From Phyllobates terribilis (taxonomy: Eukaryota): a DNA stretch of 64,000 nt. Both the position numbers and the translations under genes were made by a program. The notes under the pieces are model-generated. The model was not told the origin of the DNA and ran no database searches. It saw only the letters and a program-made list of their open reading frames with translations. Below, piece after piece: positions 1-64,000 of the stretch. Location of the stretch: contig NW_027362761.1 of the NCBI RefSeq assembly GCF_046119375.1, positions 785,354,001-785,418,000 of the forward strand. Direction: 5' to 3'. Numbering within the stretch: the first letter of the stretch is position 1; each line of letters opens with the position of its first letter.

Positions 1-990
1 TTTTTTCGTTCCCCGCCTTGAGGTGGACAAATGGTCTCACTGTTGTCAGAGTCGCCAGATGGGTCGATTTCACCCTCAGAAGATGGTGCTATATCTTCTC
101 TGGGTCCCTGGACCCCTGAACCTGGGGGCTGCAGGGACGTAATAGAAGCCTGAACTTCTTAGATTATACTGCGAATCTCATTTAATAAAGCTCCGTGTTC
201 CTCCTTTAGCATGGAGGCTCTACATTCAGCACAGGCGCTTTGTATACGAGACAGGAAGTCTGATGTTACAATCCAGGCACCTCTTGGATTTCACTGTGGC
301 CTTTTTCCCCTGCATCCTTTTTTCAGAAGGAGGTGGTAACCGCACAGAGATATCCTATAAAAAATATGGAGAGCCTGGTAAGGGCAAGTTCCATTAACCA
401 TCTGAAAGGTAATGGTACACTTGCATGATTGTGGGGCGATCCAGGGAGGGTATCAGGGTGTGACACATCAGCCATTGTACTGCCAGGGGTGTCAAAGCTG
501 TAAGCCTGCATTAGATGCTCCCCAGCCCCCCTTTTTATACCTTACCTGGTCGTCCAGTCATGTTCTCCTGCTCCACTGGCGTCTTGTCGAACTGCGTTTG
601 GATCTCCCGCGCGACCAGAAGTAGTCATCCCCGAACTTCCGGTTTCGACGCCGAGCGGACCTAAAGCCGGGAGAAGCCATACCCGCCCAGAGCAAGACGC
701 AGAGAGCCCCAGCGATAGGGAAGCGGCACCCGGAGGCTCCAGCACACCGGAGGGCTGAGGGACCTACTTGGCGGCGGGAAGGAGAGAGCCGCCGCCACCC
801 CCCCCCCCCCCCCGATCCCTTGTGAGTAATGTATTTCCGCACCAGCGCTCCTCCTGTACTCCCTGCCCTGTGTAGGGAGAGGAAAAACACCGAGGAGGTT
901 GGGTGTGGGAGGGATTTTAACCTCTTGTGCTTCCTGTCCCTACAGAGGTTATGGGACTACTCCTCCTATGGTGCTGTCATGGGGATGTAC
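1..990 (-). mobile_element. 5' end of a DIRS-type retrotransposon (terminus plus degraded gag region), continuing beyond window start
   Basis: Terminus 920-985 (cttcctgtcc...ctatggtgctgtcatggg) matches the terminus of the DIRS at ~29320-29385. No intact ORF. Confidence 0.55.
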
Positions 991-1900
991 TGGAAAATGT
1001 TTTTTAAAATCCGAAATGTTGGCCTGTTCTTTGGCATCAATTACTGCATCAATGTGGTGTGGTATGGAGGCGATCAGCCTGTGGCACTGCTGAGGTGTTA
1101 TGGAAGCCCAGGTTGCTTTAATAGCAGCCTTCAGCTCGTCTGCATTGTTGGGTCTGGTGCCTCATCTTCCTCTTGACAATACCCCATAGATTCTCTATGG
1201 GGTTAAGGTCAGAAGAGTTTGCTGACAAATCAAGCACAGTGATACTGTTGTTTTTAAACAAGGTATTGGTACTTTTGGCAGTGTGGACAGATGCCAAGTC
1301 CTGCTGGAGAATGAAATTTCCATCTCCATGCTTTTCTCTGCTGACAAGCTTTTTGAAGTGCTCTAAAATTTCCTGGTAGACAGCTGCGCTGACTTTGGTC
1401 TTGATAAAACACAGTGGACCTACACCAGCAGATGACATGGCTCCCCAAACCATCACTGATTGTGGAAACTTCACACTAATCCTCAAGCAGCTTGGATTGT
1501 GGCCTCTCCACTCTTCCTCCACACTCTGGGACCTTGATTTCCAAATGAAATGCAAAATTTACTTTGCATTTACTTAGTGTGTCAATGACTGCCTTCTGGA
1601 CATCTGTCAAGTCAGTAGTCTTCCCCATGATCGTGGAGCCTACTGACAGACTAAGGGACCTTTTTAAATGCTTAGGAAGCTTTTGCAGGTGTTTTTTGTT
1701 AATTATTCAAATTTACTGAGATAAAGACTTGTGTTTTCACTGGGCGCAAGCCATAATCATCAACATTAACAGAAATAAACACTTGAAATAGATCACTCTG
1801 CTTGTAATGACTATATAATATACGAGTTTTACTTTTTGTATTGAAGAACTGAAATAAATTAACTTTTTTGATGATATTCTAATTTAGTGAGAAGCACCTG
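988..1900 (-). mobile_element. Internally deleted Tc1 DD34E transposon
   Basis: ORF 1118-1555 has VMVWGAMS, FILQQD-34aa-E (DLNPIENLW). TIR ends cacctg|TA at 1900-1902. Same family as 19705-20722. Confidence 0.85.
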
Positions 1901-1902
1901 TA

Positions 1903-2325
1903 TGTCTCCTGATTTGACCCCAAATGAACACCTATGGGGAATTCTGGAGACGAGTTGAGCATCACTCTCCATCCAGCATCCAGGCTCTAAAAGAGGTCAT
2001 TCCTGAAGAATGGATAAAGATAGATGTTGTCAACTTGTTCATGCCATGCCTAGAAGACTTGGTGCTGTTCTTAAATATGAGGTCATACAAAATACTGGAT
2101 GTAGATGTTTTTCATGTGCGGTGTACACATTTTTTGCATCAACTAATTAGAGTAAAACTGGAGATTTTGTAATGAAAGTTAATATAACATTACTTTCATG
2201 TTATGGGTTAAAAATGTTCCATGAAACTGTCTTGTCAAAGTTTTGGAAATTGTTCTTGTATTCAGTGAGGTATTTATTAAGATTATATGGTTCAAAAAGG
2301 GTGTTCTCATTTATGCTGAGCAATG
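1903..2325 (+). mobile_element. 3' fragment of a different Tc1 element
   Basis: Degenerate SPDL.P.EHLWG motif at 1905-1945 and RRVEHHSPSSIQALKEVI. TIR-like end gctgagcaatg|TA. Confidence 0.55.
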
Positions 2326-2359
2326 TATATATCCATTTATTTTATTTTTTTTAAATCAC

Positions 2360-3010
2360 TCTCCCACCCACCCCTTTTTCCCAGTTTTGAAATATAGAAA
2401 TATATACGGTAATACTTAATTGGTGTCACGGTGTCTGTTAAAGTCCGGTCTATTAAAATATAACATTATTTAAAAGCACCCATTAAAAAAAAAAAAAAAG
2501 TGATTTGCTTTTATTTTCCCAGAACCTACAGTTCCTATCTGAAAAAGCAATAAAAAAAAAAAAAAAAAAAAGCGATCAATATGTTGTATCTTCCCCAAAA
2601 TGGTATCAATAAAAGTGTTGGATCAGTTAAATAAAGATTCATAATTGACATTTTTTAAAATAAAATGGCTAAAATAAAATAAAAAAATTCACTACCATAA
2701 TATAAAAAAACTGGACAAGTTTGGTAGTGCCAATCACACCGACCTGGAGAATCACATTACCAGGCCCTTTTTACTGCACAATGAACGCCATAAAAACAAA
2801 ACCCGAAAAACGGCGGTGGAATTTCAGCTTTTTCACCTCACTTGGAATTTTTCTCCCTATTTTTCAGTTTATTATATAGTAAAGTTAATTTTTTCATTCA
2901 AAAGTACAATTTGTTTTGCAAAAAACAAGCCCTCATAAGGCTATTCGGATGGAAATATATATATAAAAAAATATATATGTTGTTATAGCTTCTGGAAACA
3001 GGGCAGGATA
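2360..3010. mobile_element. Fragment of a non-autonomous DNA element (same family as ~52140-52850)
   Basis: Shares blocks such as gacctggagaat, aaaagtacaa and aa(c/t)aagcc with 52140-52850. Confidence 0.45.
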
Positions 3011-3886
3011 AAATGAAAAATTGACCAGCACCAACAGGTTTGAAGAGGCTTTTAATCTTAGAGAAGTACAATGCAAACTTACTATCAATTTAAACCCCTA
3101 ATAAAGGCAGCCTGAATACCAGTGGCAGAGGCGGTTACTTTCTCACTTTTTTGAGAAGTACATGGCGGCATCAATCAAATCCTAACTGGCAGAGCTCTGA
3201 TATTCCTCTCCTCATCCTTTTTGTATTTCCTCTCATGCAGCAGTAAATATAATTTTTGCTTTATATAAAACCCCTGACAATGCCTCTATATAATCCCTAA
3301 GCAGTGTGTGTAGAATGTCCAGTTTCTGTATGCAATGTAGCCTCACTCTACTGAAAGCTAACAGTGAGAAACTTATCACCAGCAGGAGTCACCACCAGGA
3401 GACATGTAGGAGAGGCTGAAGCTGCATCACATAGGATATACTGTAGATAAGCAGTTGACCTTTATGCTGAAGGTCCATCTCTGCAGCCATTATATGGAAC
3501 TAAGAGCAGAGGAAAAGCAATGTGAGGAGGAGCCCTTTTCCAAAACCATCATAGGAATTGTAGGCTGCATTAGGGGAGCCATATCAGAGGCTAAAAGGAG
3601 CAAGGATGGTAGACCATGTAGAAATGCCACATCAACTAAAACAGGTATACACATCATACTCAAAACCTCTACATTATTCTTTACATATAGCCATCATATA
3701 GACAAAGAATAAAGTACCGTAGGAATGGAGCAGGCAGCACAGTGAAAGGAGAAATACTTCAGTATGGGTGCATAGCTTCGAAAGAGCAACAACTCATCTC
3801 CAACCCAAGGAATCAAAAGAGAAGTAAAGGCAACACTGCAGGAAATTTACTGTATTTTTCGGACTATAAGATGCACTTTTTTCCAA

Positions 3887-4020
3887 NNNNNNNNNNNNNN
3901 NNNNNNNNNNNNNNNNNNNNNNNNNNNNNNNNNNNNNNNNNNNNNNNNNNNNNNNNNNNNNNNNNNNNNNNNNNNNNNNNNNNNNNNNNNNNNNNNNNNN
4001 NNNNNNNNNNNNNNNNNNNN
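3887..4020. other. Assembly gap (134 N)
   Basis: Run of N. Confidence 1.
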
Positions 4021-4554
4021 GATGGAGGAGCGGGGCACAGGAGGCAGCAGCCGCCCGCTGCGGCCTACACTGTCCCCGCTGCTAAAGAAAATGAATATTC
4101 ACTGGGGCGTGGGGAGCACTGAATATTCATGCTCCTTAATAGCAGCACACAGTGTAGCTGCGCTGCGGCTCCTGCCGGAATCGCCTGTGCCCGCTGTTAA
4201 AGGGCATGAATATTCAACCTCTCTCCACGCCCATGGGCGTGGGTGAATATTCATGCTGTTTAATAAGCGGGCACACGCTATAGCCCGGCAGCAGCAGGAG
4301 CCACAGCGCGGCCATGCTGTGTGCCGGCTATGAAGGAGAAGGAAGTCACTGCTCCCCGCGCACACAGTCCCGGCGTGGGGAGCAGTGACTTCCGGCAGCG
4401 GATCTCTCCTTGTGAGCCGCGCATGGCAGTGACGTCATGCGCGGCTCACATGGAGAGATCAGTGCGGGCAAACAGGACGCAGCGCTGGAGGAGAGAGAAG
4501 AGAGGCGAGTAGGAGTGTTGGATGATAGGGATGAAGGGTGCCATGCATACCAGG

Positions 4555-13142: not shown

Positions 13143-14601
13143 CAGGGTTGTCCAAAAGTAGGTGGACAGAAAGTGTAATAAGGTTATGAATGGGGAGATT
13201 TATCAAACATGGTGTAAAGTGAAACTGGCTCAGTTGCCCTTAGCAACCAATCAGATTCCACTTTTCATTCCTCACAGACTGTTTGGAAAATAAAAGATGG
13301 AATCTGATTGGTTGCTAAGGGCAACTGAGCCAGTTTCACAGATCTAGTTTTCACAGATAGATCTCCCCCAAATCTGTTTTCTTTTCAGATAATTCAGATA
13401 ACACATAATGGCAAATAATTTAAATACAGATCAAAGAAAATGGATTTTAACAGAGTATTGGAAATCTCAAAATGCTGAAACCGTTAGAGCAAATTGGGTT
13501 GAAACATTTGGTACTCAAGCCCCAAAGAGACAAACCATTTACCGCATTCGTGACAAATTCAATGCCACTGGCTCAATTCTTAATGCTCCAAAAACTGGTC
13601 GACCCAAACAGTCTGTATAGAAGATAATAAACAACTTGTTGCTGAAACATTTGTTCAGAGTCCAAAAAAGTCCACCAGAAGAGCCTCTGTGGAATTGGGA
13701 ATTTCATGAGCTTCTATCATGCGAATCCTGAAATCTATTGGGTGGAAAGCTTATCGTCCACGTCTAACTCATGGTTTATTGATGGATGATCCAGACAGGC
13801 GGCTGCAATTTAGTGAGATTATGCTTAACGAAATTGAAGAAAATCCAGTAATTTTAGATAACATTATGTGGAGTGATGAAGCTTCTTTCAAATTCTCCGG
13901 CCATAGTAACAGACATAATTGTATTTACTGGTATAATGAGAACATGCATTTAACATTAGAGCAACAACTAAATGAGCCTGGTGTCAATGTTTGGGGTGGT
14001 ATTTCAAGTTTTGGTGTTTTAGGACCAATATTTTTTGATGGAACAGTCACAGGAGATAAGTATCTCGAAATTCTAACAAATCAAGTTGTTCCCCAGTTAC
14101 AGCCACAGCCTAATTCAAATTACCTTTATTTCCAACAAGATGGGGCCCCTCCACATTATTCAAGAGTAGTCCGCGAGTATCTTGATGAAATATTTCCTAA
14201 TAAATGGATTGGCCGAAGAGGCCCACTTGATTGGCCAGCACGTTCACCAGACTTGACCCCAATGGATTTTTTCTTTTGGGGAGTACTAAAGGACAAAGTT
14301 TATAGTCGAAAACCAAAGTGTCAGTGATTTGAAAAATTACATAAGAGATGCATTTCAAGAAATTAATACCCAAAGAGACTTGTGCAAAAAAGTTTGTCGA
14401 AGCGTAAGAGGCAGACTTCAAAGCTGTGCAAATTGTAATGGAAAACAGTTTGAGCACCTGCGTTGATAAAATTTAAGGGCTTTTGTATTATTTTTCAGAA
14501 TAAAATTTAATTGTCAATGTTATTCTTGTGTTAGTAAATATAATTTTATAAATAAATCAAAATGTTATTATTTTCTGTCTACCTACTTTTGGACCACCCT
14601 G
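13143..14601 (+). mobile_element. DD41D (rosa/Visitor-type) Tc1/mariner transposon, inactivated
   Basis: 30-bp TIRs cagggttgtccaaaagtaggtggacagaaa (28/30 identical) and TA TSD. Transposase has WSDE, QQD-41 residues-D (WPARSPDLTPMDFFFWG). Frameshift near 13615, TGA near 13708, frameshift near 14320. Confidence 0.9.
13192..13368. mobile_element. Small palindromic MITE inside the mariner 5' region
   Basis: ggggagatttatc ... gatagatctcccc termini. Perfect 41-bp internal inverted repeat, 13220-13260 vs 13298-13338. Confidence 0.7.
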
Positions 14602-21869: not shown

Positions 21870-24830
21870 TTGTGCACGCGTCTTCTTGTGCAAAGTGGCT
21901 TCGGAGATAAGTGGCAGTTATTTCAGAGGCCATGGACTAACACCCGTCTTCTTCTCTTTTCACACAGGTACATGCTCTGCTCCTGCACAATTCCTCTGCT
22001 TGCTGTATATGCCGCAATCTAATGCTCTGCTCCCCTGATTCAACTCACTGGTAGAATTCTCTGCTTGATATTTCTGCTTTATCTGTCCCATTCCATTCAA
22101 TACTCACATATGTCTGTCCTTTCCCCACTGTAGATTTTATCTGATGTTTAGAGGTGCCAAACTGCAGAGCCTACAGAGTCCTAGCTCTGTCTTTGATCAC
22201 CCAGCCATCCCCTGGTGAGATGAGCAGCTGCTAATTTAGCCACAAGCAGCTCCCACAATGCCCCTCACCTGATGGTTTAGTGTGCCCTATATATTTAGAA
22301 GCTCCCTAAGGGGTGCACGCGTCTTCTTGTGCAAAGTGGCTACGGAGATAAGTGGCAGTTATTTCAGAGGCAGTTAGTCAGGGCAGGAGTCTGGTAACCA
22401 ACACTTTGACCACTTACTCTCTTTTAACTATGTTTCTGTTAGCTCTCACTTTTTCCTCTATAGTCCTCCACTTTCTAGTAACCCCTCAAATCCCTACACC
22501 TAGTAAGGAACTGTTCATCTCTTCCTCCATCCTCCCCATTCATCTCACCTCCTCCTCAGAATTATTCCTCAACATTCAATCGTGGATCTCCAAACACAGA
22601 CAGCCACCTCATGCTCTCTCTTGCTCCCACCTGCTAACACTTTCTCTGCTCCTCCTCACTGCTGGAGATATCTCTCCAAATCCTGGTCCTCCTCGCCATA
22701 TCCCCACAGTTACTTCTACCTCCTATCCACGACCTTCCACAAACTGTCGCAACCCTTCTAACCTCATACCCATCCAACTAATTCCCACTTCCTCAGTTGC
22801 ACTAACAGGAGCTCTATGGAACGCTCGCTCCGTCTGCAACAAACTTTCCTACATCCACAACCTTTTCATTACTAACAAACTTTCCTTCCTCGCCATCACC
22901 GAAACCTGGCTCACCCCCTCTGACACAGCCTCCCCAGCTGCACTTTTATATGGCGGATTCCACCTTTCCCACACCCCCGGCCCCAACAGCAAACATGGCG
23001 GAGGCGTAGGTTTTCTCCTGTCAGATACCTTTGCTTTCACCCAAATATCACTGCCACCCTCCGTTACACTCCCCTCTTTTGAGGTGCACTGTGTGCGCAT
23101 CTATTCCCCCTCTGACCTCCAACTGGTCATCATTTACCGACCCCCAGGGCTAGCCACCACTTTCTTAGACCACTTCACCACCTGGCTGCTTCACTTCCTT
23201 TCCGCTAACATCCCCACTATCATAATGGGCGACTTCAACATCCCCATTGACACTTCCCACTCGTCTGTCTCTAAGTTCCTATCCCTCACTTCCTCATTCG
23301 GCCTTGCTCAATGGTCTTCTGCAGCTACTCACAAAGATGGCCACACACTGGACCTCATCTTCACCCGCCTCTGTTCCCTATCTAACCTCTCTAACTCACC
23401 TCTCCCTCTCTCTGACCATAACCTCCTCACATTCTCTACCCTCTCCTCTCCAGGTGCACAATCCCCACTCCACAAACTTACACACGCTCGCAGAAACCTC
23501 AAACACCTTGACCTACACTCACTCTCTGAATCCCTCCTCCCTCTTACAGACATAAATTCCTTACACAATGCAGATGTTGCTGCCGCTTCATATAACACCA
23601 CAATAGCTGCAGCTCTCGACTCGATCGCCCCTCTCACACATACCAAATCTCGCACAATCAACAGGCAACCCTGGCACACCAAACTTACTAAAGACCTGTG
23701 ACGGGCCTCCAGGGTTGCGGAGCGGAGATGGAAAAGGTCTCACTCCATCGAGCACTTCATCGCATTCAAACAATCCCTCACTATTTTCAAGTCTGCACTC
23801 ACTACAGCAAAACAAACCTACTTCTCATCTCTCATATCCTCCCTGTCTCACAACCCTAAACAGCTATTTAACACTTTCAATTCTCTCCTTCGTCCCCCAG
23901 CACCTCCTCCCTCTTCTCTCATCTCAGCCGAAGACTTTGCCTCATTCTTCAAGCAGAAGATTGACACCATCAGACAAAGATTTTGCCTAAAGTCCGCACA
24001 ACCCCTCCTCATATCTACTCAACCTTCCTCCTCCAAACCGCACTTTTCCACCATTACAGAAGGTCAAGTCTCCCCTTTACTCTCCAAATCACACCTCACC
24101 ACCTGCGAACTTGACCCCATCCCATCCCACCTCACCCCTTACCTTACCACAGTCTTCATCCCAACCCTAACCCACCTCTTCAACCTGTCACTAACAACCG
24201 GTGTCTTCCCCTCATGTTTCAAACATGCCGCAATCACACCCATCCTCAAAAAGCCCTCCCTTGACCCATCCTCTCTGACTAGATACCGTCCCATATCACT
24301 TCTCCCCTTTGCCTCAAAATTACTTGAACAACATGTCCACCTTGAACTGTCCTCCCACCTCTCCTCCTGTTCCCTCTTCGACCGCCTACAATCTGGTTTC
24401 CGACCGCATCACTCGACTGAAACTGCCCTGACCAAAGTCACCAACGACCTACTAACAGCCAAATCCAAGCGACACTACTCCATCCTCCTCCTTTTGGACC
24501 TGTCATCTGCCTTCGACACAGTGGACCATTCCCTCTTACTACAGATTCTCTCATCTCTTGGCATCACGGACTTGGCCCTATCTTGGATCTCCTCATACTT
24601 AACAGACAGGACATTCAGCGTCTCCCACTCACGCACCACCTCCTCATCTCGCCCCCTGTCGGTGTCCCCCAAAGTTCAGTTCTAGGACCTCTGCTCTTCT
24701 CCATCTACACCTTTGGCCTGGGACAGCTCATAGAGTCTCACGGCATTCAGTATCACCTCTATGCTGATGACACACAGATCTACCTCTCTGGAACCGATAT
24801 CTCCTCCCTACTAACCAAAAGGACCAGGTA
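21870..24830 (+). mobile_element. L2-clade LINE: 5' region plus ORF2 (2A-like leader, AP endonuclease, RT up to YADD), 3'-truncated
   Basis: APE motifs WNARS, ITETWL, GGGVG, IYRPP, GDFN, LDL, SDH. RT motifs [29 protein letters not shown]. Stop at 23699 and later frameshifts. Confidence 0.9.
22601..22690 (+). other. 2A-like (StopGo) peptide ...SHLLTLSLLLLTAGDISPNPG|P
   Basis: In-frame GDISPNPGP at 22664-22690, preceded by a Leu-rich helix and upstream of the APE domain. Confidence 0.75.
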
Positions 24831-30544: not shown

Positions 30545-31924
30545 ACATTAGGTCTAGTCAGTAGTGTTTGGAGAAAGTATGAATTGAGGACCATGTGGCA
30601 GCTCAGCAAATCTGTTCGATGGATGAGCTGGCTTTTTCAGCCCAGGGGACAGATATCGCCTTTGTAGAATGGGCCTTGAGCTTTGTTGGAGGAGGTAGAT
30701 CCTGGATCTGGTAAGCCTCCGTAATGGCCCTCTTAATCCAGTTGGCTATTGTGGATTTTGCTGCTTTCTTTCCTCTGTTTGGAACGTGCGTATGGACAAA
30801 TAGGTTCTTCTCTTTCCTTCCTTCTTCTCTTTCCTGAAGATAGTGCAGTACTATTCTCCAAACGTCCAGAGTGTGGAATTCCATCTCTTTTTTGTCTTTT
30901 GGGTTGTCACAAAAAGATGGCAGGATTATCTCCTGAGATCTGTGGAAATTTGAGACCACCTTAGGTAGAAATGAAGGGTCAAGTTGGAAAATTAGACGAT
31001 CTTCCAGGATTCTCAGGTAGGGTTCGTTGACCGAAAGGGCCTGTAGTTCACACACTCTTCTGGCTGTAGTTATTGCCACCAGGAAAGCCGTTTTCCAGGA
31101 CAGCCTGTCCAGTCTTATGGTTGATAAGGGCTCAAAGGGTGGAAGGGTTAACTCTTTCAGAACAATGTTAAGGTCCCAGGGGGGAACCAGGTCTGTTACT
31201 CTAGGGTGGATGCGGGTGGCTGCTGTCATAAATCTTCTCACCCACTGATGTTCCGCTAGCTTTGATCGAAGTATGAACTTAACGCCGCTACGTGGACCTT
31301 AAGAGTACTAGGTCTGAGACCTTTGTCCAGATCTTCTTGTAAAAAGTCTAGAATCTGAGCCACATCAGCCCTATGAGGGTCTGGGCGAGTGGGTGCACAC
31401 CACCTTAAGAAGGTTTTCCAGATCTTATGGTAAATGGTGTTCGTTACAGGTTTCCTGCTCTTCTGGAGAGTTTTGATGACTTTCTCTGAGAGGCTTCTTG
31501 TTTTTAATATCAGGAATTCAGAAGCCAGGCAGTTAGGTGTAGTCTCTCGGGATCCGGATGGTGAATCGGTCCCTGGAGAAGGAGATCCTTGATGGGAGGA
31601 AGGATTAGAGTGCTCTCCACACTTAGACTGGTTAACATTCTGAACCAACTTCTTTTTGGCCAGTGAGGGGCCACTAGGATTACTCTGGTCACTTCGGTCC
31701 TTATCTTCTGTAAGGTTTTTGAAAGGATAGGTAATGGGGGAAAGGCATACGCTAGTTTGAATTCCCATTTGTAAGCGAATGCGTCCATGCCCAGGCAAGG
31801 GCCGTTTGGATCCAGGGAGAAATATTGAGGTACTTTTGCGTTCTGGTGTCCGGCGAAGAGATCTACCTCTGGATAGCCCCATCTCTCGACTAACATCTGG
31901 AAGACGTCTGGGTTTAGGCTCCAC
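30545..31924 (-). pseudogene. DIRS tyrosine recombinase (interrupted)
   Basis: ORFs 31256-31924 and 30603-31241 contain TARRVCELQAL and AHSTKA, then IC*AATWSSIHTFSKHY* with in-frame stops. Confidence 0.85.
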
Positions 31925-33045
31925 TCTCCTGGATGAATCTTTGTTCTGCTTAATAATTCAGCCTGGATATTGACTGAACCTTTGATATGAAGAGCCGACA
32001 AGGATAGAAGATGTTCTTCGGCCCAGGAGAATATTCTTGCCGAGATTGCTTTTAAGCTTTCGTATCTTGTGCCCCCTTGATGACGAAGGTGGGCTACCGT
32101 GGTGATGTTGTCTGAAAATATCTGAATGTGAGATTTCTGGACCAGAGGCTCTGCTGCTCTGAGGACTTTCTCTACGGCTTTTAGTTCTCTGAAATTTGAT
32201 GAGCGTTGGCTAACCCCTTTGGTCCATATACCCTGGAATAGCTCTTGGGAGACCATGACTCCCCATCCCTTTTCGCTGGCATCCACCTTTATGGTTACTA
32301 GCGGATTCTGGATCCATGGTACTCCTCTGTTCAGATTTTTTTCGTTCAGCCACCAGAATAGAGAAGTCCTTACTCGTGGTGGTATAGGGATTCTCCTGTT
32401 CAGAGACCGTGGGGATCCATCCCAATTCGTAAGGATGTGGGTCTGTAATGTTCGAGTATGCGCCTGAGCCCAGGCCACCATCTGAATACAGGATGTCATA
32501 GACCCGAGGACCGACCTGGCGTCTCTTAATGATACTGATCTTCTGCTCTTTAGGACGTTGATTTTTGCTTTTATCATGACCTGTTTTTGTTTGGGCAGGA
32601 ATGACATCTGGCTGTGGGAATCCAATAGTACTCCTAGAAATGTTTTTGTCATGGAGGGAACCATATCGGATATTTTCTGGTTCACTAACCAGCCCAGACA
32701 TGATAGGATCTGAGTGGTCAACCGTAGATGTTCTCGGAGTACTGGTACTGAGGGCCCGATTAATAACAGGTCATCGAGGTATGGTACTATTGAAATGTTC
32801 TGACCCCTGATATAAGCTATGACTTCTGCCATGACTTTTGTAAATATTTGCGGGGCTGATGAAATTCCAAATGGGAGAACATTGAATTGATAGAGGACTA
32901 TTTGATCCCCCTGAGCCACTGCAAATCTTAGGAACCTCCTGTGAAGTGGATGTATGGGGATGTGGTAATATGCATCCTGGAGGTCGATTGTGGCCATGAC
33001 ATGGTCCTGTCCTATCAGGGGGACCGTCGACCTGATGGATTCCAT
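31510..33045 (-). CDS. DIRS reverse transcriptase - RNase H - methyltransferase-like ORF (511 aa open)
   Basis: IDLQDAYYH, LPFGISSAP, YLDD, VDASEKGWG, SNFRELKAV, FSDN, VDLFA, AYAFPP. The RT N-terminus is frameshifted at the T-run near 33120. Confidence 0.85.
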   Translation of the reverse strand: MESIRSTVPLIGQDHVMATIDLQDAYYHIPIHPLHRRFLRFAVAQGDQIVLYQFNVLPFGISSAPQIFTKVMAEVIAYIRGQNISIVPYLDDLLLIGPSVPVLREHLRLTTQILSCLGWLVNQKISDMVPSMTKTFLGVLLDSHSQMSFLPKQKQVMIKAKINVLKSRRSVSLRDARSVLGSMTSCIQMVAWAQAHTRTLQTHILTNWDGSPRSLNRRIPIPPRVRTSLFWWLNEKNLNRGVPWIQNPLVTIKVDASEKGWGVMVSQELFQGIWTKGVSQRSSNFRELKAVEKVLRAAEPLVQKSHIQIFSDNITTVAHLRHQGGTRYESLKAISARIFSWAEEHLLSLSALHIKGSVNIQAELLSRTKIHPGEWSLNPDVFQMLVERWGYPEVDLFAGHQNAKVPQYFSLDPNGPCLGMDAFAYKWEFKLAYAFPPLPILSKTLQKIRTEVTRVILVAPHWPKRSWFRMLTSLSVESTLILPPIKDLLLQGPIHHPDPERLHLTAWLLNS

Positions 33046-33468: not shown

Positions 33469-36191
33469 TCATCCTGTTTTGCCTTTACCCCTATATTGAG
33501 GGGTCTGCTCTTGGGAGGGACGAAAAGGCCTCTTCCTCACATTCCTAGGGTCCGGGAGGGCCTTCTTATCTGAGGCCTTCTCTAGAAGATCATCTAGGGC
33601 TGGCCCGAACATGTATTTCCCCTTAAAGGGGATAGAACACAACTTCATTTTTGATGCCACGTCGCCGTTCCAGGATTTCAACCATAGGGCCACTCTCACG
33701 GATTCTGCAGAGGCGTCTGCTAAAAACCCCGTAGCTTTCTGTAGAAGCAGTAGGCATGCCAAGATGTCTTCTCTGGGGGTGCCTGAAACTAGGTATTCCT
33801 CCAGTTGATCTAGCCAACGAGCCATTGATCGAGCTACGCCCGTAGAGACTGCGTTGGTGCTTAGTGTTGCCGAGGTCTCCCAGGATTTTCTGAGTAGTCC
33901 CTCCATTTTGCGTTCCAAGGGGTCTTTTAATTGAGAGGAATCTTCAAAGGGCAGTGTGGTTTTCTTTGCTACTCGCGCAATCTGGATATCCACTCTTGGG
34001 ACTTCAGACCAGCATTCTGCCGTCTCATTGTCTACAGGAAATCTATCCCTTAACTCTGTAGGGGTATTTAATCTCTTTTCTGGAGATTCCCACTCCTCTA
34101 AGACTAAGTCCCTAATACTCTGGTGTATATGGAACACCATTTTTTTTCCTGGAACGTAGCCCCCCAAACATCTGATCCTGTACTGTTTGGGGCACTTTCT
34201 TCCTCGACCTCCATAGTTCTCCTTACTGCCATGAGGAGTTCCTCCAAACTATCTGATGGAAAGTAATATCTCTCTCGTTGGGAGTTATCAGGGGCTGAAC
34301 TTAGTTCACCTTCCTCTGGAAGATCTTCCGAGATATATACAGTTAGGTCCATATATATTTGGACAGACAACATTTTTCTAATTTTGGTTCTAGACATTAC
34401 CACAATGAATTTTAAACAAAATAATTTAGATGCAGTTGAAGTTCAGACTTTCAGCTTTCATTTGAGGGTATCCACATTAAAATTGGATGAAGGGTTTAGG
34501 AGTTTCAGCTCCTTAACATGTGCCACCCTGTTTTTAAAGGGATCAAAAGCAATTGGACAATTGACTCCAAGGCTATTTCATGGACAGGTGTGGACAATCC
34601 CTTCGTTATGTCATTCTCAATTAAGCAGATAAAAGGCCTGGAGTTGATTTGAGGTGTGGTGCTTGCATTTGGAAGGCTTTGCTGTGAAGTAAACATGCGG
34701 TCAAAGGAGCTCTCCATGCAGGTGAAACAAGCCATCCTTAAGCTGCAAAAACAGAAAAAAAACATCCAAGAAATTGCTACAATATTAGGAGAGGCAAAAT
34801 CTACAGTTTGGTACATCCTGAGAAAGAAAGAAAGCACTGGTGAACTCATCAATGCAAAAAGACCTGGGCACCCACGGAATACAACAGTGGTGGATGATCG
34901 CAGATTAATCTCCATGGTGAAGAGAAACCCCTTCACAACAGCCAACCAAGTGAACAACACTCTCCAGGAGGTAGGCGTTTCAATAGCCAAATCTACCATA
35001 AAGAGAAGACTGCATGAAAGTAAATACAGAGGGTTCACTGCACGATGCAAGCCACTCATAAGCATCAAGAATAAAAAAGGCTAGACTGGACTTTGCTAAA
35101 AAAAAAAAAAACATTAAAAAAGCCAGCACAGTTCTGGAAGAACATTCTTTGGACAGATGAAGCAAAGATCAACCTCTACCAGAATGATGGAAAGAGAAAA
35201 GTATGGCGAAGGTGTGGTACAGCTCATGATCCAAAGCATACCACATCATCTGTAAAACACGGGGGAGGCAGTGTGATGGCTTGGGCATGCATGGCTGCCA
35301 GTGGCACTGGGTCACTAGTGTTTATTGATGATGTGACACAGGACAGAAGCAGCCAAATGAATTCTGATGTATTCAGAGCCATACTGTGTGCTCAGATCCA
35401 GCCAAATGAAGCCAAACTGATTGGTCGTCGTTTCATACTACAGATGGACAAAGACCTAAAACAAAGCCAAAGTAACTCAGGAGTTTATTAAAGCAAAGAA
35501 GTGGAATATTCTTAAATGGCCAAGTCAGTCACCTGATCTCAACCCAATTGAGCATGCATTTCAATTGTTAAAGACTAAACTTCAGACAGAAAGGCCCACA
35601 AACAGCAACTGAAAACCACCGCAGTGAAGGCCTGGCAGAGCATCAAAAAGGAGGAAACAGTGTCTGGTGATGTCCATGAGTTCAAGACTTCAGGCAGTCA
35701 TTGCCAACAAAGGGTTTTCAACCAAGTACTAGAAATGAACATTTTATTAATTATTTAATCTGTCCAATTACTTTTGGTCCCTTTAAAAACAGGGTGGCAC
35801 ATGTTAAGGAGCTGAAACTCCTAAACTCTTCCTCCAATTTTAATGTGGATACCCTCAAATGAAAGATGAAAGTCTGAACTTAAACTGCACCTGAATTGTT
35901 TTGTTTAAAATTCATTGTGGTAATGTCTAGAACCAAAATTAGAAAAATGTTGTCTCTGTCCAAATATATATGGACCTAACTGTATATCTTCTCTTGAGAG
36001 TCTTCCTCCCCTCCCTCTGGCAGGCTAATCTTCCTCTTTTTGGCTGCTGAGGGAGTAGATGTAGAACCCTGACTAGGTGAGGGTGTAGGAAGAGTGACCG
36101 AGGCCAAGGAGGATTTGATCTCCTGACATACAATCCCCTTTATCTCCTCCATTAAGCAAGGTTGTTTTCTTCTCCGTAAAAGTCCTTGCAT
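33469..36191 (-). pseudogene. DIRS gag (ORF1), split by a Tc1 insertion and frameshifted
   Basis: ORFs 35976-36191, 34104-34403 and 33469-34167 (LPFEDSSQLKDPLERK, PFKGKYMFGPALD). Confidence 0.75.
34340..35982 (+). mobile_element. Tc1 DD34E transposon with ~220-bp TIRs, frameshifted
   Basis: TA|cagttaggtcc ... ggacctaactg|TA. MRSKELSMQVK paired-like HTH, WTDE, KHGGGSVMAW, WPSQSPDLNPIEH. Confidence 0.93.
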
Positions 36192-46075: not shown

Positions 46076-46147
46076 ATGGTGCCGCCCTCCGTCACTGTCA
46101 TCCTGCTAGATATCGAGGGCACCACCACCCCCATCACCTTCGTCAAG
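46076..46147 (+). CDS. ENOPH1: Enolase-phosphatase E1 exon 1 (MVPPSVTVILLDIEGTTTPITFVK)
   Basis: HAD motif I variant LLDIEGTT, aaacATGG Kozak, AAG|gtaagg donor. Confidence 0.95.
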
Positions 46148-46348
46148 GTAAGGATGCGGCCCAACCATCGGCACCAGGGTGGGGGCTGGTACAGGCGCTC
46201 CCCTATCTCCCTGCCGCCAGCACTGCAATACGGGGCTGTGGGACCAGTGCTAGCCACACGGCTACTGTCCATGTGCTCGGGGTCCGAGCGTTATCTAGGT
46301 GTGCTCCATGGCTCTGCATCACTGGGCATCCAGCCTTCATCACTGGTA

Positions 46349-46726
46349 TCCCGGAGCGTCGTCACTCATACCGGCTGTATGTCACCGAGCATGATCACTC
46401 ATACCGGCTGTATGTCCCGGAGCGTGATCACTCATACCGGCTGTATGTCCCGGAGCGTGATCACTCATACCGGCTGTATGTCCCGGAGCGTGATCACTCA
46501 TACCGGCTGTATGTCCCGGAGCGTGATCACTCATACCGGCTGTATGTCCCGGAGCGTGATCACTCATACCGGCTGTATGTCCCGGAGCGTGATCACTCAT
46601 ACCGGCTGTATGTCCCGGAGCGTGATCACTCATACCGGCTGTATGTCCCGGAGCGTGATCACTCATACCGGCTGTATGTCCCGGAGCGTGATCACTCCCG
46701 GAGCGTCGTCACTCATACCGGCTGTC
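46349..46726. repeat. 33-bp CpG-rich minisatellite (tcccggagcgtgatcactcataccggctgtatg), about 11 copies; remnant units at 51409-51452
   Basis: Eight perfect 11-codon repeats in the ORF track. Confidence 0.95.
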
Positions 46727-56097: not shown

Positions 56098-58263
56098 AAT
56101 TATTATTTATTATTATAGTGCCATTTATTCCATGGCGCTTTACATGTGAAAAAATAGGGTATACATAGCAAAAACCATTACAATAATCTTTTTTACAAGT
56201 CAGTGACTGGTACAGGAGGAGAGAGGACCCTGCCCGCAAGAGCTCACAATCTACAAGGGATGGGTGAGGATACAGTAGGTCAGGGTACAGCTAGTCGTGC
56301 AGCGGTATGGTGGAGCGGTGGTTACTGTAGGTTGTAGGCTTGACGGAAGAGGTGGGTCTTCAGGTTCCTTTTGAAGGTTTCCACGGTAAGCGAGAGTCTG
56401 ATATGTTGGGGTAGAGTTCCAGAGTAGGGGGGATGCATGGGAGAAATCTTGTATGTGATTGTGGTAAGAGGAGAGTAGAGAAGGAGATCTTGTGAGGATT
56501 GGATGTTGCGTGCAGGTTAGTACCGAGAGACTAGGTCACAGATGTATGGAGGAGACAGGTTGTGAATGGCTTTGTATGCCAAAGTTAGGGTTTTAAACTG
56601 GAGTTTCTGGGCAATAGGGAACCAGTGAAGGGATTCACAGAGAGGAGAGGCCGGGAAATAGCGGGGAGACAGGTGGATTAGTCGGGCAGCAGAGTTTAGA
56701 ATAGATTGGAGGAATGAGAGAGTGTTAGAAGGGAGGCCAAAGAGTAGGAGGTTGAAGTAGTCGAGGCGGGGAGAGGATGAGGGCGTACACTAGTGTTTTT
56801 GCAGATTCTTGGTTGAGGAATGTGCGGATCCCGGAGATATTTTTGACTTTGAGTCGGTAGGAAGTGGAAAGGGCTTGGATATATGGTTTGAAGTAAAGAT
56901 CAGAGACCAGGGTTACACCGAGGCAGTGAGCTTGTGAGACTGGAGAGAGTGGGCAGCCATTGACTTTGATAGATAGGTCAGATGGGGGGTTTGAGTGAAA
57001 TGGGGAAAAATTATGAATTCTGTTTTGTCTGTTAAATTTTAGAAATCTAGCAGAGAAAAAGGATGAAATAGCGGACAGACATTGTGGGATTATGGTTATT
57101 GAGGAGGTGATCTCAGATCCAGAGAGGTAGATCTATGTGTCATTAGCATAGAGGTGATACTGAAAGCCGTGAGACTCTATGAGCTGTCCCAGGCCGAAGG
57201 TGTAGATGAGGAAGAGTAGGGGTTCGAGAACTGAACCCTGGGGGACACCAACAGATAGGGGGCGAGATGAGGAGGTGGTGTAAGAGTGGGAGACACTGAA
57301 TGTCCGTTCTGTTAGGTATGAGGAGATCCAAGATAGGGCCAAGTCTGTGATGAATCTGTAGGGAATGGTCCACTGTGTCTAAGGCAGATGACAGGGCCAG
57401 GAGGAGGAGGACAGAGTAGTGTTGCTTGGATTTGCCAGTTAGTAGTTCGATGATGACTTTAGTCAGGGCCGTTTCAGTGGAGTGATGCGGTTGGAAGCCA
57501 GATTGTAAGCAGTCAAAGAGGGAGCTGGAAGAGAGGTGGAAGGACAGTTCAAAGTGGACTTGTTGTTCCAGTAGTTTTGAGGCATAGGAGAGAAGTGATA
57601 TGGCACGATAGCTGGACACAGAGGATGGGTCAAGGGAGGGCTTTTTGAGGATGGGTGTGATTGAGGCATGTTTGAAACATGAGGGGAAGACACCAGTTGT
57701 TAGTGACAAGTTGAAGAGGTGGGTTAAGGTTGGGATGAAGACTGTGGTAAGTTTCAGGATGAGATGGGACAGGATTGGGTCAAGTTCACTGGTGGTGAGG
57801 TGTGATTTGGAGAGTAAAGAGGAAACTTGATCTTCTGTAATGGAGGAGAAGCTGGTTTTGGAGGAGGAAGGTTGAGTAGATATGAGGAGGGGCTGTGGGG
57901 ACTTGAAGCAAAAGCTTTGTCTGACTGTGTCAATCTTCTGCTTGAAGAATGAGGCAAAGTCTTCAGCTGAGAGGAGAGGGAAGAAGCGCTGGGGGACGGA
58001 GGAGAGAATTGAAGATGTTGAATAGCTGTTTAGGGTTGTGAAGCAGAGGATATGAGAGATGAGAAGTAGGTTTGTTTTGCTGCAGTTAAGTGTGGACTTG
58101 AAGATAGTGAAGACTGTTTAAATGCGATGAAGTGCTCCTTGGAGTGGGACCGTTTCCATCTCCATTCAGCAACCCGTGAAGCCCTTCTCCATTCTTTAGT
58201 CAGGTTGGTGTGCCAGGGTTGCCTATTGATTGTGCGAGCTTTGGTATATGTGAAAGGGGCGAC
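56098..58263 (-). mobile_element. 5'-truncated L2 LINE with 3' (AAT)n-type tail, same family as 21870-24830
   Basis: [21 protein letters not shown]. Tail tattatttattattatagtgcc at 56101 on the plus strand. Confidence 0.88.
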
Positions 58264-62190: not shown

Positions 62191-62632
62191 ATCCTCATCT
62201 CCTCCAACATCACCTGTCAGAGAGCCCCTATCAGCTTAAAAAAAATATGCACATTAATTGGTCATCAGGTCCCTCTACATTTAGTGGATTCTGATTTTTT
62301 TTCATTGTGTTTGCGGGGCCTTTATCAACTTGCAGTTGAAGCGATATTCCCAAGTTATTAAGTTACACCTGTCCAAGAGATCACTTACTGATCACTATGG
62401 GTTTGATTGCTAGGACCAATCGGGATCTCAAGATTCAGGCTATGGAACCCAATCCTAAATGGACTGAAGGTGTGCACACTCGATCTCCTCCCCATTCATC
62501 CCAAACCATCTGCTATGGATAGGGAATGACTTAATATTTTAGGACTAACTCTGTAACAGGAAAAAAGCTTGACAATCTCTCTCTCCCTCTCCCTATTTAC
62601 CCCTTAATTTTACAGTATGAATTTTGTACCTA

Positions 62633-62834
62633 CAGTTAGGTCCATATATATTTGGACAGAGACAACATTTTTCTAATTTTGGTTCTAGGCATTACCACAA
62701 TGAATTTTAAACAAAACAATTCAGATGCAGTTGAAGTTCAGACTTTCAGCTTTCATTTGAGGGTATCCACATTAAAATTGGATGAAGGGTTTAGGAGTTT
62801 GTTGTCTCTGTCCAAATATATATGGACCTAACTG
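62633..62834. mobile_element. 202-bp deletion derivative of the 34340-35982 Tc1
   Basis: About 168 bp of left TIR joined to the last ~35 bp of the right TIR, with TA on both sides. Confidence 0.9.
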
Positions 62835-63140
62835 TATGTAGCTTTTGTTTTTTATTTTGACTCCATTTGTAGGACAAATGAGTCAAAACACAAATCATGA
62901 AAATAGATAAATATCAACATACTGCCCTTTCTCATATGTATATTGTTCTGCTGGGGTGAGTCTATATTTCTAACTACAATGTTTTCACCCTTCCTGTGAA
63001 ATTTGTGCACCCACAATGCATTGTGGGAACATGCATAATAGATGCACCAGTGACAGTGTTAGCAGATTCTCCATGAAAATGCTCTGTTTCTAGACAAATG
63101 ACGTGAATGTGCTTTATAAAACCCTGTTTTGTCTTTTTAG

Positions 63141-63272
<132 letters not shown>

Positions 63273-63595
63273 TAACTTTCCAACTGTGAAATGTATATAA
63301 GGCCATACGTTTTAAAAAATCCATATTTTTTGTTATAAGGATTATCACTATTTTGAGAGCAAATTAATATTGTATTAGTCACCATAATAAAAACTTCAAT
63401 TTGTAAAAATAAACGGTTGTGATTATTTTTTTTTATTTGTTTTTTTAATACCGCTAATATATGGAGTTAAAATTAGTTTTTTTTTTTTTCTTGTTTCACT
63501 ATCCTTATTGCAACAAAATAAAACAATTGTCTGAATCTATTTAATTAAAAATGTCTTGCTGTTTTGTTGCTGCAGAGTTTGTACAACGCCTTTTT

Positions 63596-63903
63596 ATGGT
63601 ATGGAAAAGGAATGTAAGGGCTAATCTGCACTACCAGTATAGTAGAACGGAAGAGGAGAACAATATCCGGGAATGTGGTTTATTAGTCAACGCGTTTCAA
63701 AGTTCCAAACTTCTACATCAGGACAAACTACAGACTGATGTAGAAGTTTGGAACTTTGAAATAGTTTGTCCTGATGAAGAAGTTTGGAACTGCGAAACTT
63801 GTTGACTAATAAACCACATTCCTGGATATTGTTCTCCTCTGTCATTCTACTATTCCGGCAGTGCATGTTAACCCTTATGTTCCTTTTACCTTTTCCAAGC
63901 CAT
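63596..63903. mobile_element. Penelope-like inverted pLTR pair with hammerhead cores
   Basis: 63596-63731 is inverted to 63762-63903. Both arms carry a hammerhead core followed by AATAAA. Confidence 0.7.
63765..63809 (+). ncRNA. Type I hammerhead ribozyme motif (stem III damaged)
   Basis: UUUGUC-CUGAUGA-A-GAAGUU/UGG/AACUGC-GAAA-CUUGU-U-GACUAA. Stems I and II pair. Confidence 0.6.
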
Positions 63904-64000
63904 GGGTCTGCAGCAGCATTAGGTCTATAGCACGTGACTACTGCAACCAATCCCTCACTCAGTTGTCTCATGCTGTCTACCTTGTCATAAGCAGCGGAAA

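What the first reader, a model, noticed from the sequence alone, without database searches (positions are those of the whole stretch)
63596..63903. Back-to-back hammerhead ribozymes in a Penelope-like palindrome in ENOPH1 intron 2
The plus strand (sense to ENOPH1) has an intact CUGAUGA...GAAA core at 63771-63797, with stem II GAAGUU/AACUGC and stem I UUUGUC/GACUAA, but stem III is ACUUGU. The minus-strand copy (63731-63685) has the intact palindromic ACGCGU stem III but a CUGAUGU core. Each is followed by AATAAA. The lesions are complementary, so the ancestral active ribozyme can be rebuilt. The ACGCGU stem implies dimeric cleavage, as described for Penelope-type hammerheads. An active sense copy would cut the host pre-mRNA after 63803, so silencing may have been selected.
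Basis: partly seen in the sequence, partly recalled or inferred. Interest (0 to 1): 0.72.

Follow-up and report, generated by a model that had tools for sequence, protein, structure and literature searches.

The report
Dead Penelope-type hammerheads in frog intron
Two decayed copies of a common frog jumping-gene fragment lie head to head in an intron of the ENOPH1 gene, each with a small, now broken self-cutting RNA (hammerhead) motif; this is an ordinary remnant of a known kind.

Summary
An imperfect palindrome (arms 63605-63730 and 63762-63887, 87% complementary) carries hammerhead-type boxes at the stated places. It lies about 355 nt downstream of exon 2 of an ENOPH1-type gene on the + strand.

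Rfam's hammerhead models give no match. A minimal-hammerhead descriptor alone is weak evidence, with about 0.04 chance sites expected per window. The case rests on the repeat family. Contigs of a DNA run of the same frog pile up to 100-470 times unique depth on the motif. At all five sites where the local copies depart from a hammerhead, the family majority has the hammerhead letter.

The anatomy fits the minimal hammerheads of Penelope-like elements, which are known in thousands of copies in frogs, including opposite-strand pairs. Inverted 5'-truncated copies are a known Penelope insertion form.

All local copies look dead, and either transcript folds into a hairpin of about -185 kcal/mol. 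The motifs are not mutated more than their tails, so selected silencing is unsupported.

This scan has many unchecked notes of the same shape elsewhere in this genome. I rate it known and of low interest.

The parts
63596..63730 (-). Left arm: one copy of the repeat unit on the minus strand, with its 5' end at the centre and its 3' end pointing left. Similarity to the right arm fades left of about 63600.
   Evidence: Inverted repeat I1/I3; arm alignment; family contigs laid on 63605-63725 (table 8).
63680..63728 (-). Minus-strand minimal hammerhead. It has helix I, a CUGAUGU box (U at position 9, 63715), an unpaired A, a 6-bp helix II closed by G·U (63699), GAAA and the palindromic ACGCGU. The would-be cut lies between 63689 and 63688.
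   Evidence: Sequence. The family majority has the complement of A at 63715 (94% of depth) and of C at 63699 (60%).
63722..63734 (.). 13-nt loop of the perfect central hairpin.
   Evidence: Inverted repeat I2: arms 63695-63721 / 63735-63761, 27 nt, 100% complementary, 13 nt apart.
63735..63761 (+). Third, truncated copy. It holds only the stretch from the CUGAUGU box to GAAA, with no helix III, cleavage site or helix I 3' strand. It is an exact reverse complement of the left arm.
   Evidence: The probability of 27/27 identity at the arms' divergence is 0.019.
63764..63812 (+). Plus-strand (gene-sense) minimal hammerhead. The CUGAUGA and GAAA boxes are intact, with an unpaired A and G10.1-C11.1. 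It has an A·G mismatch in helix II (63792) and a non-palindromic ACUUGU (63799, 63800). The would-be cut lies after 63803.
   Evidence: Sequence; descriptor hit. The family majority has T at 63792 (97%), G at 63799 (70%) and C at 63800 (67%).
63762..63917 (+). Right arm: one copy of the repeat unit on the plus strand. The family's 5' edge is at about 63757-63764, and family contigs reach 63917.
   Evidence: 39 contigs carry unrelated sequence before 63764; records 7 and 8 reach 63917; arm alignment.
63141..63242 (+). Exon 2 of the ENOPH1-type host gene (context only). The palindrome starts about 355 nt downstream of it, in intron 2.
   Evidence: TIGR01691 positions 20-51, E 2.3e-4; spliced contig in X8.

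Best explanation
The locus is a fossil of a Penelope-like-element insertion in a frog genome. Two copies of a unit of about 130-155 nt lie head to head, with their 5' ends at the centre. The unit consists of a minimal type I hammerhead followed by AAUAAA and a tail of about 100 nt. It may be the 3'/pseudo-LTR end of the element or a short non-autonomous derivative.

Such inverted, 5'-truncated pairs are the known by-product of Penelope integration. The element's endonuclease cuts both DNA strands, and both ends are extended by reverse transcription. That step is inferred here, not shown.

In the living element the hammerhead is thought to process the element's RNA. It would work as a dimer through the palindromic ACGCGU, or with help from the element's protein.

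At this locus all three motif copies carry disabling or weakening changes:
- Minus-strand copy: A9 has become U.
- Plus-strand copy: a helix II mismatch and loss of the helix III palindrome.
- Middle copy: truncated.

Any transcript through the locus, including the ENOPH1 pre-mRNA, is predicted to fold into a long hairpin instead of a hammerhead. The locus is therefore an inert intronic repeat that has decayed at the neutral rate.
For: [quoted passage not shown]
- **Precedent in frogs.** The same paper reports about 9,000 such motifs in Xenopus tropicalis, and pairs 100-700 bp apart on opposite strands.
- **Known insertion form.** An inverted 5'-truncated copy next to a Penelope copy is described as a usual insertion form, with hammerheads near the 3' ends/pseudo-LTRs. 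A purified Penelope-like protein cleaves and extends both DNA strands.
- **Family data** (DNA run X1, unique depth about 8.8). Summed contig depth is 900-4,100 over 63642-63857. At all five sites where the local motifs depart from a hammerhead (63715, 63699, 63792, 63799, 63800) the family majority has the hammerhead letter. About ten other contigs show the same inverted arrangement, with 8-22 unrelated letters at the centre.
- **Inactivity.** Lesions as above. The MFE of the 308-nt RNA is -185.6 (+) and -186.0 (-) kcal/mol as one hairpin, against -4.3 and -3.4 for the hammerhead pairing scheme of the isolated 49-mers. The self-duplex at helix III is -11.5 for the CGCG form and -3.7 for the + copy.
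- **Neutral decay.** Fisher tests give p = 0.43 and 0.33.
- **Genome context.** The genome is a frog with many hammerhead and Penelope notes from this scan (unchecked leads).
Against: - No Rfam hammerhead model matches at E up to 10.
- The relaxed descriptor is expected by chance about 0.04 times per window, which means thousands of times per large genome.
- No RT or GIY-YIG coding sequence is linked to this family here. No Penelope domain was seen in the ten ORFs scanned with Pfam, of 33 ORFs of at least 130 aa in the window, so the tie to Penelope rests on motif type and insertion form.
- The family has a sharp 5' edge at about 63757-63764. That fits a discrete short element better than random 5' truncation.
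- No target-site duplication was recognised.
- Linked covariation within copies could not be read from contig summaries.
- No cleavage assay exists for this family.
Confidence: 0.82

Rival explanations
1. The unit is a discrete short non-autonomous element of about 155 nt, SINE-like or a monomeric relative of the animal non-LTR retrozymes. It would start just upstream of its hammerhead and be mobilised in trans by Penelope-like elements. It would not be a 5'-truncated end of an autonomous element. This changes the name of the parent, not the verdict on the locus.
For: - The 5' edge is sharp: 39 contigs carry unrelated sequence before 63764.
- Depth is highest over the hammerhead and the next 50 nt or so, and drops about tenfold beyond.
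- Retrozyme families of 51-972 bp, many found as monomers, are reported as sisters of Penelope pseudo-LTRs in Xenopus.
Against: - Here the copies are inverted, not tandem, so no circular RNA could be excised from one strand.
- The drop in depth may only mean that several subfamilies share the conserved hammerhead.
- The contig summaries do not give whole copies.
Confidence: 0.3
2. The sense-strand hammerhead is or was a functional part of ENOPH1 expression. Either it cuts the pre-mRNA, or it was silenced by selection because it did.
For: The + copy keeps both core boxes and G10.1-C11.1, and it is in the sense orientation 355 nt downstream of exon 2. A preprint finds mild depletion of retrozymes from introns in Xenopus.
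Against: - The + copy has lost the helix III palindrome and has a helix II mismatch.
- Its hammerhead fold (-4.3 kcal/mol) competes with a -185.6 kcal/mol hairpin whose other arm is transcribed first.
- Lesion density in the motifs is no higher than in the tails.
- Minimal hammerheads cleave weakly even when intact.
- In X8, contigs on both sides of the palindrome have a similar low depth, 3.6 and 2.6 (table 8), though contigs cannot show RNA ends.
Confidence: 0.04
3. The palindrome is a fold-back or MITE-type DNA transposon, and its hammerhead-like boxes are a chance resemblance.
For: - The shape is a 300-bp palindrome.
- No Rfam hammerhead match.
- The descriptor is not rare by chance.
- A true MITE-like palindrome lies 800 bp away, at 62616-62885.
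Against: - Most family copies are single arms with unrelated sequence at the 5' edge.
- The inverted pairs have variable fillers and variable break points, not fixed terminal repeats.
- All five local departures from the hammerhead are private to this locus, and the family majority is the better hammerhead. Beyond the boxes, the family shares the unpaired nucleotide, G10.1-C11.1 and the palindromic loop.
Confidence: 0.05

Closest known systems
Minimal hammerhead ribozymes (min-HHR) of metazoan Penelope-like elements (Cervera and De la Pena 2014, PMC4209133)
   Same: - CUGANGA and GAAA boxes.
[quoted passage not shown]
- G10.1-C11.1.
- A 6-bp helix II and a short helix I.
- Helix III reduced to one pair around a palindromic CGCG, which implies dimeric action.
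- Hundreds of copies per genome, many as single motifs or opposite-strand pairs.
- The host is an amphibian.
   Different: The local copies are broken. A9 has become U in two copies. The third has lost the palindrome and carries a helix II mismatch. One copy is truncated. The link to a Penelope pseudo-LTR was not shown for this family.
Inverted 5'-truncated insertion form of Penelope-like elements (Craig et al. 2021, PMC8557442; Frangieh et al. 2024, PMC11167929)
   Same: Two copies lie head to head with their 5' ends at the junction. The hammerhead is near the 3' portion. The same shape recurs at other loci of the family.
   Different: Here both copies are tiny (about 130-155 nt) and there is no full-length copy or ORF. 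The centre carries an extra 27-nt snap-back-like piece. No 30-40-bp 'tail' or target duplication was identified.
Animal non-LTR retrozymes / amphibian satellite-2-type hammerhead repeats
   Same: They have a type I hammerhead with a weak helix III, are related to Penelope pseudo-LTRs, and are abundant in amphibians, often as monomers in introns.
   Different: Retrozymes are head-to-tail tandems whose two ribozymes on one strand excise a circular RNA. This locus is an inverted pair with only one complete motif per strand.
Rfam Hammerhead_1 (RF00163), the canonical type I hammerhead, and the other Rfam hammerhead families (accession and family names from memory)
   Same: Same catalytic boxes and three-helix junction topology.
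   Different: No Rfam hammerhead family reached E = 10 on this sequence. Helix III is too reduced, helix II has an extra unpaired base, and there are no canonical loop-loop contacts.

Membership tests
Minimal hammerhead of Penelope-like elements (min-HHR) | Conserved boxes C3-U4-G5-A6-N7-G8-A9 and G12-A13-A14 | tested here: met
   Met in the + copy at 63771-63777 and 63794-63796. The - copy and the middle copy have U at position 9 (63715, 63741). 94% of family depth has A at position 9.
Minimal hammerhead of Penelope-like elements (min-HHR) | [quoted passage not shown] | tested here: met
   An A follows the box in all three copies, for example at 63778. The feature is listed in the paper.
Minimal hammerhead of Penelope-like elements (min-HHR) | G10.1-C11.1 pair closing a long helix II (6-8 bp) | tested here: met
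   The + copy has G63779-C63793. The stem is 6 bp with one A·G mismatch at 63792. The - copy has a perfect 6 bp closed by G·U. The family majority is a perfect 6 bp with G-C.
Minimal hammerhead of Penelope-like elements (min-HHR) | Palindromic 15.2-16.2 / loop 3 allowing a dimeric helix III | tested here: met
   The - copy has ACGCGU, with a self-duplex of -11.5 kcal/mol. The + copy has ACUUGU (-3.7). About two thirds of family depth has CGCG.
Minimal hammerhead of Penelope-like elements (min-HHR) | Families of many copies with covariation and compensatory changes | tested here: inconclusive
   The family is multi-copy and its majority is a better hammerhead than the local copies. A minority letter at 63807 (20%) would turn the U·U in helix I into a pair. 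Linked changes within single copies could not be read from contig summaries.
Minimal hammerhead of Penelope-like elements (min-HHR) | Self-cleavage of the RNA | not testable with these tools
   This needs an in vitro or in vivo assay. Contigs cannot show RNA ends.
Penelope-like element (retrotransposon) | ORF with a telomerase-like RT and a GIY-YIG endonuclease in the parent element | not tested
   The locus has no ORF. Pfam scans of ten of the window's 33 ORFs of at least 130 aa found LINE-type APE and RVT_1 fragments and no GIY-YIG. The rest of the genome could not be searched. Scan notes mention such ORFs elsewhere in this genome (unchecked).
Penelope-like element (retrotransposon) | Pseudo-LTRs, direct or inverted, with an adjacent inverted 5'-truncated copy | tested here: met
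   The arms lie head to head. Other loci of the family show the same inverted joint. The form is described.
Rfam hammerhead families | Score at or above the family's gathering threshold | tested here: not met
   No hammerhead family was listed at E up to 10 on 2,001-, 161- or 61-nt stretches.
Non-LTR retrozyme | Head-to-tail tandem units, each with a complete hammerhead on the same strand | tested here: not met
   The complete motifs are on opposite strands. The only same-strand neighbour (63735-63761) lacks a cleavage site.

The most novel reading that the evidence does not exclude
The fold-back point of these inverted Penelope-type pairs may not be random. At this locus, and in about ten other contigs of the family, the joint lies at or inside the hammerhead. 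Here the extra 27-nt piece spans exactly C3 to the last A of GAAA. The hammerhead stretch, whether as RNA structure, as a cDNA hairpin or as the 5' end of the template, might therefore direct the snap-back or template jump that creates inverted pseudo-LTRs. That would give the ribozyme motif a structural role in integration beyond cleavage. A side possibility is that the resulting intronic RNA hairpin, with 126-nt arms about 87% paired, is a substrate for editing or small-RNA production.
Probability: 0.1. Interest if true: 0.45.

Novelty: already known. Interest (0 to 1): 0.15.

Why it matters
It matters little on its own. It is one more decayed copy among thousands of Penelope-type minimal hammerheads in an amphibian genome, in an arrangement already described in the literature.

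Its use is as a clean worked example:
- The local lesions can be told from the family state using read or contig data.
- It shows that an intronic, sense-oriented copy need not have been silenced by selection.
- It shows that Rfam models do not see this hammerhead class, and that relaxed descriptors alone are not specific.

Tried and rejected
- **Rfam scans.** I ran three cmscan searches at E up to 10 on 2,001, 161 and 61 nt. They returned only microRNA-type hairpin and snoRNA noise, and no hammerhead. The miRNA matches reflect the palindrome and all lie far below gathering scores, so I rejected them.
- **Other hammerheads in the window.** I searched with the strict box and with a covarying N3-N8 box. 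No other site turned up.
- **Parent element in the window.** I looked for an RT/GIY-YIG element among ten of the 33 ORFs of at least 130 aa. Only LINE-type APE and RVT_1 fragments, a DDE_3 fragment and a LAP2alpha-like ORF were found.
- **Target-site duplication.** I looked by eye at the arm ends (63596/63903 and 63565/63918) and recognised none.
- **Retrozyme.** Rejected because the arrangement is inverted, not tandem.
- **Assembly artefact.** Unlikely. Exact X1 contigs cover 62814-63668, 63732-63830 and 63811-64000, and the centre has depth of about 23-31. X1 may, however, be the sample that was assembled.
- **Not done.** I wrote out no rebuilt or consensus sequence of the element. Only per-site majority letters are reported.

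Full report
**What is there**

The sequence at 63596-63903 is an imperfect palindrome. Its arms, 63605-63730 and 63762-63887, are 126 nt long and 87% complementary. A global alignment gives 17 substitutions in the first 125 positions, after which the similarity fades.

The 27-nt stretch from the CUGAUG box to GAAA occurs three times in the window and nowhere else. The three sites are 63721-63695 (-), 63735-63761 (+) and 63771-63797 (+), and none was found in 100 shuffles.

- The + copy has an intact CUGAUGA, an unpaired A and helix II GAAGUU/AACUGC with loop UGG. GAAA and ACUUGU follow, then the helix I 3' strand GACUAAU with AAUAAA inside it.
- The - copy has CUGAUGU, a perfect helix II closed by G·U, GAAA and the palindromic ACGCGU.
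It is cut off right after GAAA and is a 27/27 reverse complement of the left arm.

**Gene context**

Translations of 46076-46144 and 63141-63242 (+) match the enolase-phosphatase family TIGR01691 at consecutive profile positions 1-18 and 20-51. A contig of run X8 joins the end of exon 1 (46116-46145) to 63139. These are therefore exons 1 and 2 of an ENOPH1-type gene on the + strand. Earlier notes of this scan identify the genome as a frog.

**Is it more than chance?**

The curated Rfam hammerhead models do not match at E up to 10, even when the 61-nt motif is searched alone.

I wrote a relaxed minimal-hammerhead descriptor: the two boxes, an optional bulge, a 4-9-bp helix II with at most one mismatch, a 0-6-nt loop 3, UH, and at least 3 bp of helix I. 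It finds only the site at 63771 (+) in the window. It also finds 41 sites in 128 Mb of first-order Markov sequence, which is about 0.04 per window and thousands per large genome. A single motif of this kind is therefore weak evidence.

The real evidence is the repeat family. I laid Logan contigs of a DNA run of the same species (X1, unique depth about 8.8) at 80% likeness or more. This gives summed depths of 900-4,100 over 63642-63857, with dozens to over a hundred contigs at each variant site. That points to hundreds of related copies, although the tool warns that depth is not a copy number.

The local motifs depart from a hammerhead at five sites. At every one, the majority of the family has the hammerhead letter.

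| Site | Local state | Family majority |
|---|---|---|
| 63715 | U at position 9 (- copy) | A at position 9, 94% of depth |
| 63699 | U11.1 (- copy) | C11.1, 60% |
| 63792 | A·G mismatch in helix II (+ copy) | T, which makes helix II a perfect 6 bp; 97% |
| 63799 | T, loop reads CUUG (+ copy) | G, 70% |
| 63800 | T, loop reads CUUG (+ copy) | C, 67%; with 63799 this restores CGCG |

Variation elsewhere in the family fits the structure. One variable site, 63705, falls in loop II. The minority A at 63799 is a CpG-decay product. At 63807, 20% of depth has A, which would pair the U·U in helix I.

**What it is**

The anatomy matches the minimal hammerheads that Cervera and De la Pena found in the pseudo-LTRs of Penelope-like elements. 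Their listed features are:

- a conserved G10.1-C11.1 pair;
- a long helix II and a short helix I;
- a palindromic helix III/loop 3 implying dimeric action.

That paper reports about 9,000 such motifs in Xenopus tropicalis, mostly as single motifs, with some pairs 100-700 bp apart on opposite strands. It also reports low cleavage in vitro.

Craig et al. describe an inverted 5'-truncated copy next to a Penelope copy as a usual insertion form, with hammerheads near the 3' ends. Frangieh et al. show that a purified Penelope-like protein cleaves and extends both DNA strands, which gives a plausible route to head-to-head copies. They also show that its hammerhead is protein-assisted and not needed for insertion in vitro.

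In one search, about ten other contigs of the family show the same inverted joint, with 8-22 unrelated letters at the centre. A further 39 contigs show the unit starting at about 63757-63764 after unrelated sequence.

This scan holds many unchecked notes of the same shape elsewhere in this genome, for example a 372-bp palindrome 'folded back at the hammerhead'.

I could not link the family to an RT/GIY-YIG ORF. The unit may therefore be the 3' end of an autonomous element or a short non-autonomous derivative. The sharp 5' edge favours the latter somewhat.

**Is it active, and was it silenced by selection?**

All three copies carry lesions, as described above. The two complete motifs are on opposite strands, so they cannot form the dimeric ribozyme in one RNA. 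Instead they pair with each other.

| Structure | Predicted energy (kcal/mol) |
|---|---|
| 308-nt + RNA, one long hairpin | -185.6 |
| 308-nt - RNA, one long hairpin | -186.0 |
| Hammerhead pairing scheme, isolated + 49-mer | -4.3 |
| Hammerhead pairing scheme, isolated - 49-mer | -3.4 |
| Helix III self-duplex, CGCG form | -11.5 |
| Helix III self-duplex, + copy | -3.7 |

Mutation density in the hammerhead parts is not higher than in the tails.

| Comparison | Hammerhead part | Tail | Fisher p |
|---|---|---|---|
| Arm against arm | 5/49 | 12/74 | 0.43 |
| Against family majority | 5/98 | at least 14/150 | 0.33 |

This fits neutral decay. Related retrozyme copies are common in Xenopus introns (about 43%), although mildly depleted there. 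From general knowledge, conserved sense-oriented intronic hammerheads exist in amniotes, and slow ribozymes in introns are tolerated. There is therefore no need to invoke selected silencing.

In run X8, which contains spliced ENOPH1 mRNA, intron contigs on both sides of the palindrome have a similar low depth (3.6 and 2.6). Family copies from other loci are also present in X8. Contigs cannot show RNA ends.

**Unexplained**

The central 27-mer is identical to the left arm although the arms differ by 13.6% elsewhere (P = 0.019). It spans exactly from the first box to GAAA and is followed by the same 9 nt that precede the box in both arms. Two histories fit: a snap-back of nascent cDNA followed by a jump to the second copy, or a later 36-nt slippage or conversion.

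The family's 5' edge lies about 40 nt upstream of the would-be cut, so it is not the ribozyme's cleavage product end.

**Verdict**

This is an ordinary, dead member of a known kind. I printed no rebuilt sequence of the element, only per-site majority letters. The N run at 3887-4020 was left alone.

Noticed in passing
window 62616-62885: A palindromic MITE-like repeat of about 200-270 bp. Rfam gives only sub-threshold miRNA-hairpin matches at 62634-62833. Summed contig depth is 4-8 x 10^5 against about 8.8 for unique DNA in X1. It is also abundant in runs of two other coded organisms (B and C), so it is probably one of the most abundant repeats of this frog lineage.
   Followed up: partly
window 46076-46147 and 63141-63242 (+): Exons 1 and 2 of an ENOPH1-type (acireductone synthase, TIGR01691) gene. 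Intron 1 is about 17 kb. A contig in run X8 carries the exon 1-exon 2 junction, so that run holds spliced mRNA.
   Followed up: yes
window about 46300-46700 (+): A tandem repeat of about 33 bp lies just inside intron 1. In one frame it reads as about eight copies of an 11-residue unit.
   Followed up: no
window 22352-23698 (+), 31510-33042 (-), 57143-57706 (-), 13719-14324 (+), 33469-34164 (-): Transposon ORF fragments: an APE-type endonuclease, two RVT_1 reverse-transcriptase pieces, a DDE_3 transposase piece, and an ORF matching the LAP2alpha domain (PF11560, E 5.9e-11) next to one RT piece. None has a GIY-YIG domain.
   Followed up: partly
window 63695-63761: A perfect 27-bp hairpin with a 13-nt loop lies at the centre of the palindrome. 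Its arms run exactly from the CUGAUG box to GAAA. It is identical between arms although the rest of the arms differ by 13.6%.
   Followed up: partly
window 63702-63771, other loci seen through run X8: An RNA-run contig of depth 67 carries the same inverted hammerhead joint with 22 different letters at the centre (table 5c). At least one other inverted copy of this family is therefore present in RNA at a level not far below ENOPH1 exon 2 (depth about 230-280).
   Followed up: no
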